Shown: positions 1-8,774 of the stretch, piece by piece | Numbering within the stretch: the first letter of the stretch is position 1 | Layout of the letters: every line of letters begins with the position of its first letter | DNA from: Octopus sinensis | Lineage: Eukaryota | Length of the DNA stretch: 8,774 nt | NCBI RefSeq assembly: GCF_006345805.1 | Contig: NW_021828313.1 | Span: 1-8,774 of the forward strand | Reading direction: 5' to 3' | Position numbers and translations under genes: made by a program | Notes under the pieces: generated by a model | Seen by the model: only the letters and a program-made list of their open reading frames with translations | The model's database searches: none | Told to the model about the DNA's origin: nothing

Positions 1-1257
1 CGGGTTTGTAAGGGAAATACTATATAAGCATTTTTAGAGAGTTATAGCCAAACAATAGCAAAAAATGCATTAAAAATGCAAAAAAATGACGGTAAATTTT
101 TTTTAAATCGTTGACTCATCGTAGACATTTTTAGAGAGTTACTTCCCTTATATATGCCAAAAATGCATTAAAAATGAGCAACATTGATGGTAAATTTTTT
201 TTTAATCGTAGACTCATCGTAGATGCGTGCTAATACCCAAAAGGGCTCGATATGAATCACGACTATAAGATACCCGGTTTTGGTTAAACAGCACCGCAAA
301 ATGTGGGAGTTGTTAGGAATCTAAATCGTAGGAGACAGACACACAACTTCTCTTTTATATATATAGACTAGCAGTATCGCCCGGCGTTGCTCGGGTTTGT
401 AAGGGAAATAACTATATAAGCATTTTTAAGGAGTTATAGCTAAACAATAGCAAAAAAATGCATTAAAAATGCAAAAAAATAATGGTAAATTTTTTTTAAA
501 TCGTTGACTCATCGTAGACATTTTTAGAGAGTTACTTCCCTTATATAAAGGCGAAAAAATGCATTAAAATGGAAAAAAATGATGGTAATTTTTTTTTACA
601 TCGTAGACTCATCGTAGACATTTTTAGAGAGTTACTTCCCTTATATAATAGCGAAAAAATGCATTCAAATGGAAAAAATGATGGTAATTTTTTTTTTTAT
701 CGTAGACTCATCGTAGACGCGCGCTAATACTCAGAAGGGCTCGATATGAATCACGACTATAAGATACCCGGTTTTGGTTAAACTGCACCGCAAAATGTGG
801 GAGTAGTTAGGAATCTAAATCGTAGGAGACAGACACACAACTTCTCTTTTATATATATAGACTAGCAGTATCGCCCGGCGTTGCTCGGGTTTGTAAGGGA
901 AATAACTATATAAGCATTTTTAGAGAGTTATAGCTAAACAATAGCAAAAAAATGCATTAAAAATGGAAAAAAATGATGGTAAAATTTTTTTAAATCGTTG
1001 ACTCATCGTAGACATTTTTAGAGAGTTACTTCCCTTATATAATAGCGAAAAAATGCATTCAAATGGAAAAAAATGATGGTAAATTATTTTTTAAATCGTA
1101 GACTCATCGTAGACGCGCGCTAATACCCAGAAGGGCTCGATATGAATCACGACAATAAGATACCCGGTTTTGGTTAAACTGCACCGCAAAATGTGGGAGT
1201 AGTTAGGAATCTAAATCGTAGGAGACAGACACACAACCTTACTTTTATATATAAAGA
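1..1257 (-). mobile_element. Head-to-tail array of non-autonomous Helitron-like elements: units 862-1257 (396 bp), 368-861 (494 bp) and 1-367 (cut by the window edge)
   Basis: On the minus strand the array starts A|TCTTTATATATAAAAG at 1258|1257. Units end CCCGAGCAACGCCGGGCGATACTGCTAG, a GC-rich hairpin about 10 nt before CTAG. Internal junctions read CTAG|TCTATATATATAAAAG at 368|367 and 862|861. 5'-TC, 3'-CTRR, a subterminal hairpin and A|T insertion are canonical Helitron hallmarks. No Rep/helicase ORF. Confidence 0.82.
421..718. repeat. Internal ~98-100 bp tandem subrepeat of the Helitron unit (3 copies here, 2 in each neighbouring unit)
   Basis: Copies start at about 421, 519 and 619 (catttttagagagtta...atcgtagactcatcgtagac). 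The extra copy accounts for the 494 vs 396 bp unit lengths. Confidence 0.85.
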
Positions 1258-1355
1258 TTTCCCTTGACTCACTTATTGCAAGAAACGGAATTTCTTCAGG
1301 TATAATCATACATGTTTCTACATGTTGCATTGTAAACTGTAGTTTTCCACTAGTA

Positions 1356-1866: not shown

Positions 1867-1910
1867 AGGTAACAATAAAATGTTTCAGAAGTGTTAGAAA
1901 ACTGATTTAT

Positions 1911-1954
1911 TTAATCAAAGTATGACCGATATTCTGTTGTTACCTTTTATCCAA
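1911..1954 (-). pseudogene. Mariner transposase, extreme C-terminus (WIKVTTEYRSYFD*)
   Basis: Continues the 2861-3097 fragment across the SINE insertion once one extra T in this TSD copy is allowed for. Matches the Hsmar1-type ending RWQKCVDCNGSYFD* (from memory). Confidence 0.8.
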
Positions 1955-1955
1955 A

Positions 1956-2860
1956 GGCGGCGAGCTGGCAGAAACGTTAGCGCGCCGGGTGAAATGTTTA
2001 GCGGTATTTCGTCTGGCGTTACGTTCTGAGTTCAAATTCCGCCGAGGTCGACTTTGCCTTTCATCCTTTCGGGGTCGATATATAAGTAGCAGTTACGCAC
2101 TGGGGTCGATGTAATCGACTTAATCCGTTTGTCTGTCCTTGCTTGTCCCCTCTGTGTTTAGCCCCTTGTGGGTAGTAAAGAAATAGGTATTTCGTCTGCC
2201 GCTACGTTCTGAGTTCAAATTCCGCCGAAGTCGACTTTGCCTTCATCCTTTCGGGGTCGATAAATTAAGTACCAGTAACGCGCTGGGGTCGATATTATCG
2301 ACTTAATCCGTTTGTCTGTCCTTGTTTGTCCCCTCTGTGTTTAGCCCCTTGTGGGTAGTAAAGAAATAGGTATTTCGTCTGCCGCTACGTTCTGAGTTCA
2401 AATTCCGCTGAGGTCGACTTTGCATTTCATCCTTTCGGGGTCGATAAATTAAGTACCAGTTACGCACTGGGGTCGATGTAATCGACTTAATCCGTTTGTC
2501 TGTCCTTGTTTGTCCCCTCTGTGTTTAGCCCCTTGTGGGTAGTAAAGAAATAGGTATTTCGTCTGTCGTTACGTTCTGAGTTCAAATTCTGCCGAGGTCG
2601 ACTTTGCCTTTCATCCTTTCTGGTTCGATATAATCGACTTAATCCCTTTGTCTGTCCTTGTTTGTCCCCTCTGTGTTTAGCCCCTTGTGGGTAGTAAAGA
2701 AATAGGTATTTCGTCTGTCGTTACGTTCTGAGTTCAAATTCCGCCGAGGTCGACTTTGTCTTTCATCCTTTCGGGCTCGATATAATCGACTTAATCCGTT
2801 TGTCTGTCCTTGTTTGTCCCCTCTATGTTTAGCCCCTTGTGGGCAGTAAAGAAATATATA
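1956..2860 (+). mobile_element. tRNA-derived SINE family A, multimeric: one head plus 5 tandem bodies (starts 2003, 2186, 2369, 2553, 2705; 183/183/184/152/~152 bp)
   Basis: A box TGGCAGAAACG (1966-1976) occurs once; B box GTTCAAATT occurs in every unit (first 2030-2038). TSD is accttttatccaa (1942-1954) vs acctttatccaa (2861-2872). The central GCCTTTCATCCTTTCGGGGTCGATAAATTAAGTACCAG resembles the Meta-domain of MetaSINEs (recalled, unverified). Confidence 0.9.
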
Positions 2861-3097
2861 ACCTTTATCCAACGTTTCTCTAAGTCATATATCCCACCTT
2901 TAAAAATATTCATCTTTTGCTGTGATAAACTCTCCAAATGCTTCAGTTATCTCTTCTTTATTTAAGAATGTTTTATTATTTATGAAAAGCTCAAAATGCT
3001 TAAATAAGTGATTATCAATAGGAAAGATATTAGACGAATTGTGAGAATGTTGCAAAATCTCATTATTCAGGCTTTGCAACTTTTGGACCGTAGCTTG
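2861..3097 (-). pseudogene. Mariner transposase C-terminal catalytic fragment
   Basis: QATVQKLQSLNNEILQHSHNSSNIFPIDNHLFKHFELFINNKTFLNKEEITEAFGEFITAKDEYF, then after a stop and frameshift GIYDLEKRWIKV. Aligns with Hsmar1 QPTLQKLNELGYEVLPHPPYSPDLSPTDYHFFKHLDNFLQGKRFHNQQDAENAFQEF. The YSPDL motif is decayed; the third catalytic D is retained. Confidence 0.88.
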
Positions 3098-3099
3098 AG

Positions 3100-3192
3100 G
3101 ACTTATTCTATTGGCCTCTTTTGCCAAACTGCTAAGTTTCAGGGATGTAAACACACCAACATTAGTTGTCAAGCGATGGTGGGGGGACAAAC
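3100..3192 (-). mobile_element. Diverged 3' part of SINE family B (old copy), followed by a decayed TA/CA microsatellite to about 3300
   Basis: The reverse complement gtttgtccccccaccatcgcttgacaactaatgttggtgtgtttacatccctgaaacttagcagtttggcaaaagaggccaatagaataagt is homologous to 4994-5086. Confidence 0.85.
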
Positions 3193-3306
3193 AAATACAT
3201 ACATACATATATAATGTGATAAATAAAAATATATGCATACATACAAACATATATGTACGTACCTACATCTACATGTATATATACATGCATATATAAATAA
3301 TTATAC

Positions 3307-3792
3307 GTGAGTACAGGACACCACAATAAGACGTAGAAACGGGAAAAAAAACAAAAAAACAAAAAATAAGAAAACGAAAAAAACAGTTACAGGACGTGCT
3401 ACACAAGAAAAAAACCCCCGTCATCAGCTGTCGCTAGTAGACTCGAGCATGTTTCGAAGGCAAAGACAGAACACTAATCCACTAGGCCTTCCTGCGAGAG
3501 AATTAAAATAAAATTCCAAGCAGCGGGGCAAAATGAGTACGAACACGAAAAAGACGTAACAGTAAAACTGCAAAAATAGAATACATGTACAAAAAATACA
3601 AATAAATACATAACGAGAAAATAAAAAGAGAATACGATACAGGAAATCAAACACACAAGAGGACGAACGAAAAAACCTTTTTTTTCTGGCATAGACGAAG
3701 GATGCTGTGGCAGCGCGTGGAAGGCAGTCTTTTCAGTAGTAGGAGCAACGTGTAAAAGAAATTTTTATAGGCTGGCAGTAAGGAAGAAGGAA

Positions 3793-3795
<3 letters not shown>
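3307..3795. mobile_element. Unidentified A-rich, strand-asymmetric insert between microsatellites; possibly a Penelope-like or other retroelement non-coding end
   Basis: It separates the head and tail of a minus-strand SINE B and is flanked by TA-rich tracts. It carries GAAAC...GTC...CTGATGA on the minus strand (3455-3421). No protein homology recognised. Confidence 0.35.

Positions 3796-3865
<70 letters not shown>
3796..3865. repeat. (TA)n(TG)n microsatellite
   Basis: Directly visible. Confidence 0.97.
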
Positions 3866-3907
3866 AGTGGATTTGGCAGACAGAAACTGAAAGAAGCCAA
3901 TTGTGTG

Positions 3908-3949
<42 letters not shown>

Positions 3950-3973
3950 TACATATACATACATGTGTGTATG

Positions 3974-4005
<32 letters not shown>

Positions 4006-4068
4006 ATATATATACATATACATACACAATTGGCTTCTTTCAGTTTCTGTCTGCCAAATCCACTCACA
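3862..4068. repeat. Perfect 45-bp inverted repeat (3862-3906 / 4024-4068) around a (TA)n-rich spacer
   Basis: tgtgagtggatttggcagacagaaactgaaagaagccaattgtgt and its exact reverse complement. Confidence 0.93.
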
Positions 4069-4189
4069 AGGTTTTGGTCAGCTTGAGGCTATAGTAGAAG
4101 ACACTCGCCCAAAGTGCCACGCAGCAGGACTGAACCTGGAACGATTTGGTTGGGGAGCAAGCTTCTTACCACACAGCCACTCCTGCGCC
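4024..4189 (-). mobile_element. SINE family B 5' half (tRNA-like head plus CORE-like segment), diverged copy
   Basis: The reverse complement ggcgcaggagtggctgtgtggtaagaagcttgc...ggttcagtcctgctgcgtggcactttgggcgagtgtcttctactatagcc is homologous to 4758-4918. Confidence 0.88.
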
Positions 4190-4301
4190 TATATTTAAGT
4201 TGTTTGTTTAATAGTTTATGCAATTTACATTATCTGTTGTAAAAGTATTAAATGAAATACTTAATGTAATATATAAAACATATGCTAGGGTTGGAGGAAT
4301 A

Positions 4302-4685
4302 GGAGCACCCCGTCGGTTGCGACGATGAGGGTCCCAGCTGATACGATCAACGGAACAGCCTGCTCGTGATATTAACGTGCAAGTGGCTGAGCACTCCACA
4401 GACACGTGTACCCTTAACGTAGTTCTCGAGGAGATTCAGCGTGACACAGAGAGTGACAAGGCCGGCCCTTTGAAATACAGGTACAACAGAAACAGGAAGA
4501 AAGAGCGAGAGAAAGTTGTGGTGAAAGAGTACAGCAGGGATCACCACCATCCCCTGCCGGAGCCTCGTGGAGCTTTTAGGTGTTTTCGCTCAATAAACAC
4601 TCACAATGCCCGGTCTGGGAATCGAAACCGCGATCCTCCGACCGCGAGTCCGCTGCTCTAACCATTGTGCCATTGCGCCTCCACA
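4302..4685 (-). mobile_element. tRNA-derived SINE family C, full length
   Basis: The minus-strand head gtggaggcgcaaTGGCACAATGGttagagcagcggactcgcggtcgg has an A box, and B box GGTTTCGATTCC at 4629-4618. A perfect 13-bp TSD ggttggaggaata lies at 4289-4301 and 4686-4698. Confidence 0.9.
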
Positions 4686-4757
4686 GGTTGGAGGAATACA
4701 TAAGTGCAGAAAGAACATGTGAAAATACATACATATGTATATATATATATATACATA

Positions 4758-4929
4758 GGCGCAGGAGTGGCTGTGTGGTAAGTAGCTTGTTTACCAACCA
4801 CATGGTTCCGGGTTCAGTCCCACTGCGTGGCACCTTGGGCAAGTGTCTTCTACTATAGCCTCGGCCCGACCAATGCCTTGTGAGTGGATTTGGTAGACGG
4901 AAACTGAAAGAAGCCTGTTCGTACATATG

Positions 4930-4981
<52 letters not shown>

Positions 4982-5600
4982 TTGTGTGTCTGTGTTTGTC
5001 CCCCTAGCATTGCTTGACAACCGATGGTGGTGTGTTTTTGTCCCCGTCACCTAGCGGTTCGGCAAAAGAGACCGATAGAATAAGTACTGGGCTTACAAAG
5101 AATAAGTCCCGGGGTCGAGTGTTCGATTTAAGGTGGTGCTCCAGCATGGCCGCAGTCAAATGACTGAAACAAGTAAAAGAGTAAACTTAGCAGTTCGGCA
5201 AAAGAGACCGATAGAATAAGTACTGGGCTTACAAAGAATAAGTCCCGGGGTCGAGTTGTTCGATTTAAGGTGGTGCTCCAGCATGGCCGCAGTCAAATGA
5301 CTGAAACAAGTAAAAGAGTAAACGTAGCGGTTCGGCAAAAGAGACCGATAGAATAAGTACTGGGCTTACAAAGAATAAGTCCCGGGGTCGAGTTGTTCGA
5401 TTTAAGGTGGTGCACCAGCATGGCCGCAGTCAAATGACTGAAACAAGTAAAAGAGTAAACGTAGCGGTTCGGCAAAAGAGACCGATAGAATAAGTACTGG
5501 GCTTACAAAGAATAAGTCCCGGGGTCGAGTTGTTCGATTTAAGGTGGTGCTCCAGCATGGCCGCAGTCAAATGACTGAAACAAGTAAAAGAGTAAAAGAG
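4758..5600 (+). mobile_element. tRNA-derived CORE-like SINE family B with internal (TA)n(TG)n and a 3' tail repeated 4 times
   Basis: A box TGGCTGTGTGG, B box GGTTCAGTCC (4811-4820), CORE-like ACCTTGGGCAAGT (4832-4844), microsatellite about 4922-4995, end gagtaaaagag. A possible short TSD tatacat (4750-4756 / 5601-5607) is ambiguous because it lies in simple repeat. Confidence 0.88.
5052..5600 (+). repeat. Four tandem 136-137 bp copies of the SINE B 3' tail (starts 5052, 5188, 5325, 5462)
   Basis: Near-identical units tagcggttcggcaaaagagaccgatagaataagtact...gaaacaagtaaaagagtaaac. Confidence 0.95.
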
Positions 5601-5634
5601 TATACATGTATACACGCACGTAATTATTGGGACC

Positions 5635-5929
5635 CTGCGATATGTAACACATTGCGTTGAAGTGGGGCAAAATTGGGCCATCTCTATTCACTAATCGGGG
5701 TCGCTTCTTTTTCAAATTCTCACGCATAAAATCAATTTCCTGTCAATGCGTTGCTGCTGTTTCCGTTTTCCTTTGTTGCAAAAATGAATAATGAATAATT
5801 CCTTTCGCAGACCACCGTACAGAGACCACAAACATTTTAGGGTGCCACGCTGGGATTTGGTAGTGTTTAGGTGACTCTCCTGCATCTAATCACTGTCCAT
5901 TTCTCATCACAAGTAATGATTCAATGCAA
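5635..5929 (-). pseudogene. Mariner transposase central catalytic fragment
   Basis: LH*IITCDEKW (first catalytic D), a short deletion and frameshift, then *LDAGESPKHYQIPAWHPKMFVVSVRWSAKGIIHYSFLQQRKTETAATH*QEIDFMRENLKKKRPRLVNRDGPILPHFNAMCYISQ. Compare Hsmar1 WLDQEEAPKHFPKPILHPKKVMVTIWWSAAGLIHYSFL...LVNRKGPILLHDNARPHVAQ. The second catalytic D is mutated to F. Confidence 0.92.
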
Positions 5930-6712
5930 GGTGGCGAGCTGGCAGAATCGTTAGCACATCGGGCGAAATGCTTTGCGGTATTTCGGCTGCCGTTACGTTG
6001 TGAGTTCAAATTCCGCCGAGGTCGACTTTGCCTTTCACCCTTTCGGGGTCGATAAATTAAGTACCAGTTACGCGCTGGGGTCGATGTAATCGACTTAATA
6101 CCTATGTCTGTCCTTGCTTGTCCCCTCTGTGTTTAGCCCCTTGTGGGTAATAACGAAATAGGTATTTCGTCTGCCGTTACGTTGTGAGTTCAAATTCCGC
6201 CGAGGTCGACTTTGCCTTTCATCCTTTCGGGGTCGATAAATTAAGTACCAGTTACGCACTGGGGTCGATGTAATCGACTTAATCCCTTTGTCTGTCCTTG
6301 CTTGTCCCCTCTGTGTTTAGCCCCTTGTGTGTAGTAAAGAAATAGGTATTTCGTCTGCCGTTACGTTGTGAGTTCAAATTCCGCCGAGGTCGACTTTGCC
6401 TTTCATCCTTTCGGGGTCGATAAATTAAGTACCAGTTACGCACTGGAGTCGATGTAATCGACTTAATCCCTTTGTCTGTCCTTGCTTGTCCCCTCTGTGT
6501 TTAGCCCCTTGTGGGTAGTAAAGAAATAGGTGTTTCGGCTGCCGTTACGTTGTGAGTTCAAATTCCGCCGAGGTCGACTTTACCTTTCATCCTTTCGGGG
6601 TCGATAAATTAAGTAGCAGTTACGCACTGGGGTCGATGTAATCGACTTAATCCGTTTGTCTGTCCTTGCTTGTCCCCTCTGTGTTTAGCCCCTTGTGGGT
6701 AGTAAAGAAATA
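5930..6712 (+). mobile_element. tRNA-derived SINE family A, multimeric: one head plus 4 tandem 184-bp bodies (starts 5977, 6161, 6345, 6529)
   Basis: Single A box (TGGCAGAATCG), B box in each unit. TSD is gattcaatgcaa (5918-5929) vs gatttaatgcaa (6713-6724), 11 of 12 identical. Confidence 0.9.
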
Positions 6713-6943
6713 GATTTAATGCAAAAATGGTCTTTTTCCAGCCGGGAAAATAATCAAGAGCACAATTCGAGGCGCCTGTTTTTTTAAAATCTCGTTCAGT
6801 TGATGTGGAACAAACCTATCCGTTTTCTTGAGCTTTCCAGTTTTTTTTTACAAGTGTCCAAAAACAGTTGTGTGAGATGTTTGGAGTTCTAATGAAAGTT
6901 TTCGAACCTTTGTTCTCGGATTTTGTTCAAACAAAGCATTTAA
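6713..6943 (-). pseudogene. Mariner transposase second HTH and linker fragment
   Basis: LNALFEQNPRTKVRKLSLELQTSHTTVFGHL*KKTGKLKKTDRFVPHQLNE; FVPHQL (6797-6814) corresponds to the WVPHEL motif. After frameshifts it reads NRRLELCS*LFSRLEKD/PFLH, leading into ITCDEKW beyond the SINE. Confidence 0.88.
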
Positions 6944-6949
6944 TCCAAC

Positions 6950-7156
6950 ATGCATCCATCCATTCATCCATCCATCCATACGCACTACATAGATACGTAC
7001 GTACATACGTATATACATACATACATACATACATACATACATACATACATACATACATACATACATACATACATACATACACATACATACATACATATAT
7101 ATACATACATACATACACACACATACATACATACATACATACATACAGACAGACAG

Positions 7157-7189
<33 letters not shown>

Positions 7190-7830
7190 TACATACATAC
7201 GTACGTACATACACACATATACACATACATACATACATAGATACATACATACAAACATACATACATACATACATATACATACATACATACGTACGTACAT
7301 ACACACATATACACATACATACATACATACTACGTACATACACACATACATACATCTATACATTCATACATACATACTATCATATATACATACATACATA
7401 CAGACATACATACATAATACATACATCATACATACACACATACACCATACATACAAACATACATACAACACATACATACATACAATACACACATACATAC
7501 AAACATACATACACACATACATACAACATACATACATACACACATACACACATATACATACAAACATACATACAAACATACATACTACATACATACATGC
7601 ATACATACATACATACTATATTATACATACACACACACATACATACATACATACATACATACATACATACATACATTCATACACACATACACATACATAC
7701 ATACATAATACATACATACATACATACATACATACATACATACATACATACACCTACTACATACACAGATGCCTACATACATACATACATCCACCACCAC
7801 ACACATACATACACACATACACACACACAC
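6950..7830. repeat. Long compound microsatellite: (CATC)n, then mainly (TACA)n with (CA)n and (CAGA)n
   Basis: Directly visible; it produces the H-T-Y-I / M-Y-V-C ORFs. Confidence 0.97.
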
Positions 7831-7959
7831 AGGCGTCATATGCACACGGATGGTTACGTGCAAGCTTTTGCTTATATAATAAAATTATTTCCTTCAATAA
7901 AATAAAAAAAACAGAGAAAAACTACAAAAATCTAAAATACGTAAACATCGAACAATGGC

Positions 7960-8165
7960 CTCCCCCCCTCTCTCTCTTTCCCTCTGTCTGTCTCTCTCTC
8001 TCTTCTCCCTTTCTCTCCCTCTGTCTATCTCTCTCTTTTCCCTTTCTCTCCCTATGTCTGTCTCTCTCTCTCTCTTTTCTCCCTTTCTCCCTCTCTCTCT
8101 CTCTCTCTCTCTGTCCCTCTCTCTCTCTCTCTTTCTCTCCCCTTCCCTATGTTTCCTTTTCTCCT
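7960..8165. repeat. (CT)n polypyrimidine microsatellite
   Basis: Directly visible. Confidence 0.95.
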
Positions 8166-8544: not shown

Positions 8545-8645
8545 GTAGCTCACGTCAGGTGGTGAAGTGACCGCAGGGGCAGCGTGAAAGGCAGCGTTTC
8601 TGTCCAAAAACAAGATGCATCACCTTGACTGGGAATCGAACCCCG
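8545..8645 (-). mobile_element. Decayed tRNA-SINE fragment (B box plus possible CORE-like segment)
   Basis: Perfect B box GGTTCGATTCC at 8642-8632, followed by ttgtttttggacagaaac (weakly CORE-like). The A-box region is replaced by microsatellite. Confidence 0.4.
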
Positions 8646-8649
8646 ATTA

Positions 8650-8774
8650 ATCTCTCTCTCTCTCTCCTCTCTCTCTCAAAATATCTATGTATATATATAT
8701 ATCTTTATCTATCTATCTATCTATTCTATCTATCTATCTATCTATCTATCTATCATCTATCTATCTATCTATCT
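8650..8774. repeat. (CT)n / (TA)n / (TATC)n microsatellite
   Basis: Directly visible. Confidence 0.96.

What the first reader, a model, noticed from the sequence alone, without database searches (positions are those of the whole stretch)
1956..6712. Multimeric SINE system: one promoter head plus n bodies inside a single TSD pair, seen twice independently with the same junction
Seen: both family A insertions have one A-box head followed by 5 or 4 bodies. Each is bounded by its own 12-13 bp TSD. All 7 internal junctions are the same gaaata|ggt(a/g)tttcg, about 47 nt into the element. Neither array contains a TTTT run, so Pol III could read through the whole multimer. Inference: multimers are generated or propagated by retrotransposition itself, through reiterative template jumping, a circular RNA template, or a multimeric master copy, and not by random unequal crossover. 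I do not know whether this is already described for this family.
Basis: partly seen in the sequence, partly recalled or inferred. Interest (0 to 1): 0.8.

Follow-up and report, generated by a model that had tools for sequence, protein, structure and literature searches.

The report
SINE with tandemly repeated body
Two separate insertions of one short retroposon family each carry a single 47-base head followed by four or five copies of a 184-base body, which fits a mobile element that travels with a variable-number internal repeat, a known kind of thing seen here in what looks like an octopus-type genome.

Summary
A1 (1956-2856) is a 47-nt head plus 5 units. A2 (5930-6712) is a 47-nt head plus 4 units. 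All 7 internal junctions read GAAATA|GGT(A/G)TTTCG, neither array has a TTTT run, and each has its own 12-13 bp target-site duplication. Joining the flanks across each array restores one mariner transposase fossil, so both are clean, independent insertions.

The shared junction joins the exact 3' terminus to position 48. Head and unit show no significant similarity, so independent random unequal crossover is unlikely as its origin.

Unit number is not set by retrotransposition alone. A1 units form a nested tree, u1|(u2,u3)|(u4,u5), with a 32-bp deletion shared by u4 and u5. A2 u2 and u3 differ at only 2 sites. In-register DNA-level duplication therefore occurred.

The B box lies inside every unit; only the A-box-like motif is unique to the head. 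No ribozyme or tRNA model matched.

Best reading: a multimeric, VNTR-like source element (confidence 0.55). Close precedents are SINE-derived satellites in squamates and SVA.

No genome census was possible with these tools.

The parts
1942..1954 (+). A1 5' target-site duplication, ACCTTTTATCCAA
   Evidence: On the minus strand it lies within the mariner codons for WIKV.
1956..2002 (+). A1 head, 47 nt, present once. A-box-like motifs at element positions 11 and 23.
2003..2552 (+). A1 units 1-3 (2003-2185, 2186-2368, 2369-2552), 183-184 bp each. Each has the B box GTTCAAATTCC at unit position 28.
2553..2856 (+). A1 units 4-5 (2553-2704, 2705-2856), 152 bp each. They share a 32-bp deletion between the GGGGTCGAT direct repeats, and a T at alignment column 77.
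2857..2872 (+). Extra TATA (2857-2860), then the A1 3' target-site duplication ACCTTTATCCAA (2861-2872)
5918..5929 (+). A2 5' target-site duplication, GATTCAATGCAA
   Evidence: It lies in the mariner stretch PFLHxII.
5930..5976 (+). A2 head, 47 nt. It differs from the A1 head at 8 of 47 positions, about half at CpG sites.
5977..6712 (+). A2 units 1-4 (5977-6160, 6161-6344, 6345-6528, 6529-6712), 184 bp each. All four carry G at alignment column 87, where all A1 units carry C.
6713..6724 (+). A2 3' target-site duplication, GATTTAATGCAA
4758..5051 (+). Family B 5' part: a tRNA-like/CORE-like head (CCTTGGGCAAGTG...), an internal (AT)n(TG)n stretch, and a spacer with TTTTT at 5035
5052..5596 (+). 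Family B array: 4 units of 137 bp that differ at 2-3 sites. The internal junction is GTAAAAGAGTAAAC|[GT]TAGC. The array ends in the element's own GTAAAAGA-type tail. It has the same head-plus-n-bodies layout as family A.
5635..6950 (-). N-terminal part of one mariner transposase fossil (5635-5929 and 6725-6950), interrupted by A2
   Evidence: The joined flanks align to SETMAR 3k9j_A residues 1-151, E 2e-30.
1906..3091 (-). C-terminal part of the same mariner fossil (2873-3091 and about 1906-1955), interrupted by A1
   Evidence: The joined flanks align to SETMAR residues 137-226, to the C-terminus, E 7e-13.

Best explanation
Family A is a LINE-mobilised, Pol III-type short retroposon. Its retrotransposition-competent source copies already carry a tandem array of a 184-bp 3' module that runs from just before the B box to the exact 3' terminus. 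In effect it is a SINE with a body VNTR.

The founding junction (3' terminus joined to position 48) arose once, in a retrotransposition-linked event. That event was either a 5'-truncated copy landing on the tail of a full copy and then being co-transcribed with it, or a single RT template switch to a fresh 3' end. All later copies inherited the junction.

Unit number then drifts by in-register unequal exchange or replication slippage, in the sources and possibly after insertion. Whole head-plus-n-bodies transcripts are copied into new sites by target-primed reverse transcription, which gives 12-13 bp TSDs.

Shown: the anatomy, the TSDs, the empty-site continuity, the independence of the two insertions and the nested unit variants. 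Inferred: Pol III transcription, the LINE partner, the multimeric source and the nature of the founding event.
For: The junction is identical at 7 of 7 positions in two insertions that have different TSDs, different flanks and diverged heads (8 of 47). The last unit of each array ends at the same GAAATA as the internal units and directly abuts the TSD. Head and unit have no significant similarity, so no homology explains a recurrent exchange at 47|48.

The flanks joined across each array restore a colinear mariner transposase. The TSD matches are far beyond chance.

A1 units give a conflict-free tree in which sister units are neighbours: column 204 T in u2-u5, column 80 C in u2 and u3, and column 77 T plus the 32-bp deletion in u4 and u5. 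A2 u2 and u3 differ at 2 sites against 6-10 for the other A2 pairs. That is the signature of in-register DNA-level duplication.

Column 87 is C in all A1 units and G in all A2 units. The units of each array therefore share a more recent ancestor than the two lineages do, as expected for concerted evolution in separate sources.

An unrelated family, B, has the same layout: a 5' part plus 4 units that run into its own tail. All 3 full young copies of these two families in the window are multimers.

The principle has precedent. Squamate SINE-derived tandem repeats have a longer terminal unit that reaches the SINE terminus (PMC10702118). Dispersal of TE-borne tandem repeats by transposition has been reviewed (PMC6947457).
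Against: There are only two family A copies and no genome census; every external route returned nothing. No monomeric or multimeric source copy was seen.

Units at the same ordinal position in A1 and A2 share no diagnostic variants, so a shared heterogeneous master is not shown directly.

Transcripts of 781-911 nt are long for Pol III. Neither ARAGORN nor the Rfam tRNA model recognises the head, so Pol III transcription rests on box motifs alone.

In two families the repeated segment ends at the 3' terminus. That hints at a mechanism tied to the 3' end which may recur, not a one-off event.
Confidence: 0.55

Rival explanations
1. Multimers are built anew at each insertion. The LINE reverse transcriptase runs off the 5' end of a body-only RNA that starts at G48, for example a SINE RNA cleaved in the apical loop of its tRNA-like hairpin. 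It then jumps end-to-end onto the 3' end of another SINE RNA, repeats this, and finishes on a full-length RNA that supplies the head.
For: The junction joins the exact 3' terminus to a fixed internal position with no shared sequence. Position 47|48 lies in the apical loop of the central hairpin in the predicted fold of element positions 1-88. Family B repeats the pattern, with units that run into the tail. Non-LTR RTs perform serial end-to-end template jumps in vitro (PMC8857657; bioRxiv 10.1101/2021.04.30.442027). The A2 and family B units are roughly star-like.
Against: It needs 7 independent jumps that are exact to the nucleotide, with no untemplated bases, and a pool of RNAs that start exactly at G48, for which there is no evidence. 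Units born identical cannot give the nested shared variants and shared deletion seen in A1 without later DNA-level duplication. The fold z-scores are weak, -0.9 and -1.8. In family B the junction lies about 295 nt in, far from any tRNA-like loop.
Confidence: 0.15
2. Both loci received monomers (head plus one body), and the arrays grew afterwards at each locus by local tandem duplication and unequal sister-chromatid exchange.
For: In-register expansion keeps the TSDs and both element ends intact. The nested variants in A1 and the near-identical u2/u3 pair in A2 show that such duplication does happen.
Against: A monomer has no internal repeat to misalign, so the first duplication must be illegitimate. 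Its hitting the same two nucleotides (3' terminus to G48) independently at two loci, and a 3'-terminal boundary again in family B, is very unlikely. No microhomology links the unit start to either 3' flank. Head and unit tail show no significant similarity. Terminal branches in A1 (2-6 private changes per unit) are about as deep as the whole array (pairwise 6-10), so most units are old.
Confidence: 0.08
3. A circular body RNA, with its 3' end ligated to G48, is copied by rolling-circle reverse transcription, as proposed for retrozyme-type elements.
For: A circle closed at 231-to-48 would give exactly the observed junction. Tandem units of about 150-400 bp are typical of metazoan retrozymes (own knowledge).
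Against: No hammerhead, HDV-like, twister or other self-cleaving ribozyme family matched at E<=1 over the window, or at E<=10 over the first 246 nt of A2 (head, unit 1 and the first junction). The array must also start at the true 3' end and finish with a linear head, which needs two extra in-register template switches. The nested variants in A1 still need DNA-level events.
Confidence: 0.03
4. The arrays, or their unit counts, are assembly artefacts.
For: Tandem repeats of 150-190 bp are prone to mis-assembly, and no reads are available here.
Against: Every unit carries its own private substitutions, and two carry a specific deletion. Three arrays in two families show the same layout. Both arrays have intact, matching flanks inside a colinear mariner fossil.
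Confidence: 0.04

Closest known systems
SINE-derived satellites (sSats) of squamate reptiles (Vassetzky et al. 2023, PMC10702118)
   Same: They are tandem repeats made from part of a tRNA-related SINE. They have a longer terminal unit that continues to the SINE terminus, which is head-plus-n-bodies in effect. They arose independently in several SINE families and are homogeneous within and between loci.
   Different: sSat arrays reach up to about 1000 units and favour subtelomeric regions. TSDs and retrotransposition of the arrays were not addressed, and unequal homologous recombination was proposed as the initial step. Here the arrays are short (4-5 units), the unit runs to the exact 3' terminus, and each array is one TSD-bounded insertion in a different phylum.
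SVA (SINE-VNTR-Alu) composite retrotransposons of hominoids (own knowledge, not tested here)
   Same: It is a non-autonomous, LINE-mobilised element that carries an internal variable-number tandem repeat. It inserts as a whole with TSDs, and its repeat number differs among copies.
   Different: The SVA VNTR units are about 35-50 bp and internal, followed by a SINE-R part and poly(A). SVA is Pol II-transcribed and L1-dependent. Here the unit is 184 bp, contains a B box and includes the 3' terminus.
Monomer arrays of mouse L1Md promoters (PMC6454616, abstract seen)
   Same: A retrotransposon carries a variable number of tandem promoter-bearing monomers, and monomer duplication occurs within the element lineage.
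   Different: Those monomers are at the 5' end of an autonomous LINE and are Pol II promoters. Here the repeats are at the 3' end of a short non-coding element.
Head-to-tail SINE multimers and dimeric SINEs (Dip, B2, B1, Alu; PMC8466645)
   Same: Tandem SINE units, up to eight for Dip, may arise by insertion into a pre-existing tail or by retroposition of multimeric templates. The authors of that paper left the same question open.
   Different: Those multimers consist of full-length units, each with its own head. Here the internal units all lack the same 47-nt head.
Bov-A2 (two Bov-A monomers plus a linker; PMC4324840)
   Same: A retroposon built from repeated monomer units and mobilised as a whole.
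   Different: Bov-A2 has a fixed dimer with a 27-bp linker and an (AGC)n end, and no Pol III head on Bov-A2 itself.
Tandem-repeat-bearing MITE and Helitron elements of molluscs, and the Nin-SINE-derived satellite of Patella (PMC11121367)
   Same: These are mollusc mobile elements that carry or seed tandem repeats of satellite-like unit length.
   Different: Family A has no terminal inverted repeats and has long, variable TSDs, which do not fit MITE or Helitron insertion. The Patella satellite lacks A and B boxes.

Membership tests
tRNA-derived SINE (Pol III, LINE-mobilised) | Internal Pol III A and B boxes near the 5' end | tested here: met
   The B box GTTCAAATTCC is exact at element position 75. 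A-box-like motifs are TGGCAGAAWCG at position 11 (1 mismatch to TRGCNNANNNGG in both copies; 2 mismatches to the strict TRGCNNAGTGG in A2) and TAGCRCRYCGGG at position 23 (0-1 mismatch to TRGCNNANNNGG). This is motif level only.
tRNA-derived SINE (Pol III, LINE-mobilised) | Head recognisable as tRNA-derived | tested here: inconclusive
   ARAGORN found no tRNA. The Rfam tRNA model did not match at E<=1 over the window or at E<=10 over the first 246 nt of A2. The fold shows 5' GGCGG pairing with CCGCC after the B box, plus a central hairpin, but the z-scores are only -0.9 and -1.8.
tRNA-derived SINE (Pol III, LINE-mobilised) | Dispersed copies flanked by TSDs of variable sequence, and no coding capacity | tested here: met
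   Two insertions have different 12-13 bp TSDs. The empty sites are restored in a mariner fossil. Only short spurious ORFs are present, and their translation has no database relatives.
tRNA-derived SINE (Pol III, LINE-mobilised) | 3' region or tail shared with a partner LINE | not testable with these tools
   The window holds no LINE and no cephalopod sequence collection is available. The element ends in GAAATA(TA) without poly(A).
SINE-derived satellite (sSat) | Tandem units derived from part of a SINE, with a longer terminal unit that reaches the SINE terminus | tested here: met
   Head plus unit 1 is the longer 5' terminal unit, and units 2 to n repeat element positions 48-231.
SINE-derived satellite (sSat) | Satellite-like behaviour: long arrays and a heterochromatic or subtelomeric location | tested here: not met
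   The arrays have 4-5 units and are embedded in interspersed-repeat DNA, inside a mariner fossil. The chromosomal location is unknown.
Retrozyme / ribozyme-bearing tandem retroelement | A self-cleaving (hammerhead) ribozyme in each unit | tested here: not met
   No ribozyme family matched among the Rfam hits at E<=1 (window) or E<=10 (first 246 nt of A2).
MITE or Helitron carrying tandem repeats | Terminal inverted repeats with a fixed-length TSD (MITE), or no TSD with A^T insertion and a 3' hairpin-CTRR end (Helitron) | tested here: not met
   The ends GGYGGCGAGC... and ...GTAAAGAAATA are not inverted repeats. The TSDs are 12-13 bp and differ in sequence.
VNTR-bearing composite retrotransposon (SVA-like principle) | An internal tandem repeat whose copy number differs among TSD-bounded copies | tested here: met
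   A1 has 5 units and A2 has 4, each array inside one TSD pair. This is a resemblance in principle only; no sequence relation to SVA is claimed.

The most novel reading that the evidence does not exclude
Octopod SINE families build their multimers during retrotransposition. The partner LINE reverse transcriptase concatenates 3' fragments of SINE RNA, cut at a fixed site such as the apical loop of the tRNA-like hairpin at position 47|48. It does so by precise serial end-to-end template jumps onto fresh 3' tails, so each new insertion is born as a head plus n bodies. This would make retrotransposition a direct generator of satellite-like arrays.
Probability: 0.12. Interest if true: 0.75.

Novelty: new member of a known kind. 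Interest (0 to 1): 0.42.

Why it matters
There is little direct evidence for how interspersed repeats turn into tandem repeats (PMC10702118). Here the tandem array lies inside a single TSD pair and reaches the element's exact 3' end, in two families. That points to arrays being seeded and spread by retrotransposition, not only by local recombination.

If a census confirms it, cephalopod genomes would offer a tractable system for the birth and dispersal of satellite-like arrays. The census is a straightforward computation.

Each unit also carries a B box, so the arrays would scatter clusters of potential TFIIIC-binding sites. This last point is inference.

There is a practical side. Variable-length multimers inflate and fragment de novo SINE family counts in repeat annotation. 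One annotation reports 893 'unclassified SINE' families among recently active elements in O. vulgaris.

Tried and rejected
1. External copies for a census. Exact and degenerate pattern scans of metagenome, prokaryotic-genome and viral contig collections gave 0 hits. A protein-database search with the junction-spanning minus-strand ORF found no candidate. The other collections on offer hold phages, plasmids and E. coli and were not searched. No census was possible.

2. tRNA or ribozyme identity. ARAGORN and Rfam gave only microsatellite-driven 'miRNA' noise.

3. Homology between the head and the unit's 3' end, which could have explained the junction by homologous exchange. It was not significant: 26% and 74% of shuffles scored as well.

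4. GAAAT microhomology (head GAAATG, unit end GAAATA). An exchange there would leave GYTTWGC in the junction, and it is absent. Rejected.

5. A shared module between the A and B units. The similarity is only weak, z about 2.9 under permissive scoring and not significant under stricter scoring. Left as a hint.

6. Segmental duplication of one array to make the other. The flanks are unrelated, the TSDs differ, and the two arrays interrupt different parts of the mariner fossil. Rejected.

7. Pfam did not detect the mariner fossil. The PDB sequence search did.

8. Literature. No paper in the library describes head-plus-n-bodies SINEs in cephalopods. Albertin et al. 2015 was not held.

9. Species identity. 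'Octopod' is my recognition of the repeat content, including a CORE-like motif in family B. No tool verified it.

Full report
**1. What is there**

The window is AT-rich, microsatellite-laden, SINE-dense animal DNA. I take it to be octopod from memory of such repeats, including a CORE-like motif in one family. No tool here could verify that.

Two arrays of one family ('A') are present. A1 spans 1956-2856 and A2 spans 5930-6712. Each starts with a 47-nt head, GGYGGCGAGCTGGCAGAAWCG..., that occurs only once per array.

In A1 the head is followed by five units. Three are 183-184 bp and two are 152 bp. In A2 it is followed by four units of 184 bp.

A regular-expression search finds exactly seven junctions GAAATA|GGT[AG]TTTCG, and they fall at the predicted places. 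The last unit of each array ends in the same GAAATA as the internal units. Neither array has a run of four T or four A.

**2. Are these single insertions?**

The A2 TSD is GATTCAATGCAA against GATTTAATGCAA. It abuts the first and last base of the element.

The A1 TSD is ACCTTTTATCCAA against ACCTTTATCCAA, and four extra bases (TATA) follow the last unit.

Among about 37,500 random pairs of positions from unique parts of the window, a match of at least 11 nt with no more than one mismatch occurred in 0.2%. A match of at least 12 nt occurred in 0.024%.

A stronger test came from the flanks. Joined across A2 and read on the minus strand, they encode ...GKRPFLHxIITCDEKW.... This aligns to residues 1-151 of the SETMAR mariner transposase domain (E 2e-30).

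Joined across A1, the flanks encode ...PIDNHLFKHF...GGIYDLEKRWIKVTTEYRSYFD. This aligns to residues 137-226, right up to the C-terminus (E 7e-13). I bridged frameshifts in the fossil by hand.

Both arrays therefore interrupt one old mariner copy at different codons, and the TSDs are mariner sequence. The flanks of A1 and A2 are otherwise unrelated. These are two independent insertions and not a segmental duplication.

**3. What the units say**

In the alignment of the nine units, column 87 is C in all five A1 units and G in all four A2 units. The units of an array therefore share an ancestor that is younger than the split between the two lineages. Units at the same ordinal position in A1 and A2 share nothing special.

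Within A1 the informative characters are nested and free of conflict:
- u2-u5 share T at column 204.
- u2 and u3 share C at column 80.
- u4 and u5 share T at column 77 and the same 32-bp deletion between the GGGGTCGAT direct repeats.

Sister units are neighbours. This is what stepwise in-register duplication at the DNA level produces. It cannot arise from units that were born identical and then only mutated.

Terminal branches carry 2-6 private changes per unit. That is about as deep as the array itself (pairwise 6-10 differences), so the duplications were early.

In A2, u2 and u3 differ at 2 sites while the other A2 pairs differ at 6-10. This suggests one more recent duplication. The excess is not significant, however: private changes of 6, 1, 1 and 4 give a chi-square p of about 0.11 by my arithmetic.

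The expected decay of a 12-bp TSD pair at about 2.4% per copy is roughly 0.6 differences, and one was observed in each. That is compatible with most units being as old as the insertion. The test is very weak.

**4. The junction**

The junction joins the element's last base to position 48. Head and unit show no significant similarity.

The head contains GAAATG and the unit ends in GAAATA. An exchange at that GAAAT would leave GYTTWGC in the junction, and it is not there.

A monomer therefore offers no homology for a recurrent exchange. Two independent illegitimate events hitting the same two nucleotides are very unlikely. The junction is best read as inherited.

In the predicted RNA fold of element positions 1-88, the 5' GGCGG pairs with CCGCC just after the B box. 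Position 47|48 lies in the apical loop of a central hairpin, which has a 15-bp stem in A1. The z-scores are weak (-0.9 and -1.8), so I treat this as a lead only.

**5. Promoter**

The exact B box GTTCAAATTCC lies at element position 75, which is inside every repeated unit. The A-box-like motifs lie at positions 11 and 23 and are unique to the head. 'One promoter head' is thus half right.

ARAGORN and Rfam do not recognise a tRNA in the head. The lack of TTTT is compatible with Pol III read-through but is not informative: 22% of shuffled monomers also lack it. The first T4 run lies 21 nt (A2) and 59 nt (A1) downstream.

Transcripts of 781-911 nt would be long for Pol III (own knowledge).

**6. 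A second family with the same layout**

Family B (4758-5596) has a tRNA-like/CORE-like head, an internal (AT)n(TG)n stretch and a spacer. These are followed by four 137-bp units that differ at only 2-3 sites.

Its internal junction is GTAAAAGAGTAAAC|[GT]TAGC, and the array ends in the same GTAAAAGA-type tail. Here too the repeated segment runs to within a few bases of the 3' terminus.

This copy has TTTTT at 5035, upstream of its array. An older B-like copy on the minus strand (3093-3266) has no array and a different 3' end (and direct reading).

So all three full young copies of families A and B in the window are multimers. In both families the repeat includes the 3' end. This suggests that the founding events were tied to the 3' end, which means to retrotransposition.

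**7. Mechanism**

I consider a multimeric, VNTR-like source element most likely (confidence 0.55). The sequence of events would be:
- One founding event made a head-body-body element. It was either a 5'-truncated copy inserted on the tail of a full copy and then co-transcribed, or a single RT switch to a fresh 3' end.
- That element stayed retrotransposition-competent.
- In-register unequal exchange or slippage changes the unit number.
- Whole arrays are inserted by target-primed reverse transcription.

This accounts for the invariant junction, the TSDs, the array-specific column 87 and the nested variants.

The rivals rank as follows.
- De novo concatenation by serial template jumping (0.15) is attractive. 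Non-LTR RTs do this in vitro and both families repeat their 3' ends. But it needs RNAs starting exactly at G48 and seven exact jumps, and it cannot explain the nested variants of A1 by itself.
- Independent growth from monomers at each locus (0.08) fails on the shared junction.
- A circular-RNA route (0.03) has no ribozyme support.
- An assembly artefact (0.04) is unlikely, given the unit-specific variants.

**8. Comparison with what is known**

The nearest described case is the SINE-derived satellites of squamates. These are tandem repeats from part of a SINE with a longer terminal unit reaching the SINE terminus. They arose independently in several families, and unequal recombination was proposed as the first step (PMC10702118).

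That paper did not examine TSDs or the mobility of the arrays. Its arrays can be very long and subtelomeric.

In principle the element behaves like SVA, which has an internal VNTR and is mobilised whole (own knowledge). It also resembles the monomer arrays of mouse L1 promoters.

Full-length SINE multimers (Dip, B2) raise the same unresolved question of tail insertion versus multimeric template. Dispersal of TE-borne tandem repeats by transposition is a reviewed concept.

I found no description of this layout for cephalopod SINEs in the searchable library.

**9. Verdict**

I file the finding as a new member of a known kind: retroposons that carry and spread a variable-number tandem repeat.

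Interest is moderate (0.42). The anatomy is clean, and the question of whether retrotransposition makes or only spreads the arrays can be tested by a simple census. The principle is not new, however, and only two copies were available here.

Noticed in passing
window 1906-6950, minus strand: One mariner (Hsmar1/SETMAR-like) transposase fossil runs through the whole finding. Its N-terminal part lies at 6950-6725 and 5929-5635, and its C-terminal part at 3091-2873 and 1955-1906. It is interrupted by A2, by about 2.5 kb of nested repeats (3092-5634) and by A1. Pfam missed it; the PDB sequence search found it.
   Followed up: yes
window 4758-5596: A second SINE family (B, with a CORE-like motif CCTTGGGCAAGTG) also has a 5' part plus 4 tandem 137-bp units that run into its own tail. 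The units differ at only 2-3 sites, and a TTTTT at 5035 lies between the head and the array.
   Followed up: partly
window 3093-3266 and 3974-4189, minus strand: These are an older B-like 3' part with no tandem array and a different 3' end (...AGAATAAGT) abutting mariner sequence, and a B-like head at 87% identity. Microsatellites and about 480 bp of A-rich sequence separate them. They may be one disrupted old copy.
   Followed up: partly
window 3867-3905 and 4024-4063: A near-perfect inverted repeat of a B-head segment flanks a (TA)n tract. Rfam scored it as a spurious 'mir-5014' hairpin. It could be a rearrangement or an assembly palindrome.
   Followed up: no
window 4300-4686, minus strand: A third SINE, monomeric, with a clearly tRNA-like head (GGCGCAATGGCACAATGGTTAGAGC...GGTTTCGATTCCC). 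It is flanked by the 13-bp TSD GGTTGGAGGAATA. Rfam and ARAGORN did not call it as a tRNA either.
   Followed up: partly
window 1-1260: A tandem repeat of about 494 bp (2.1 or more copies, 93% matches, running off the window start). It contains 100-bp subrepeats and T-rich and A-rich runs. Its nature is unknown.
   Followed up: no
window 1956-2002 versus 5930-5976: The family A heads differ at 8 of 47 positions, against 3-8% for the bodies (6-14 of about 184). About half the changes (positions 3, 27, 29 and 35) are CpG to TpG or CpA, which suggests germline methylation of a CpG-rich head.
   Followed up: partly
window 6948-7831, 7968-8145 and 8625-8650: There is a very long impure (ACAT)n tract of about 880 bp and a (CT)n tract. 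A tRNA-type B box (GGTTCGATTCC, minus strand) lies next to a (GA)n tract and is probably another truncated SINE.
   Followed up: no
window 2159-2171 and the equivalent position in each unit: Each unit's 3' end carries TAGCCCCTTGTGG, which has 1 mismatch to a long-D-loop A-box pattern. It lies 54 nt upstream of the next unit's B box, so internal junctions might recreate weak Pol III promoters. No statistical support was obtained.
   Followed up: partly
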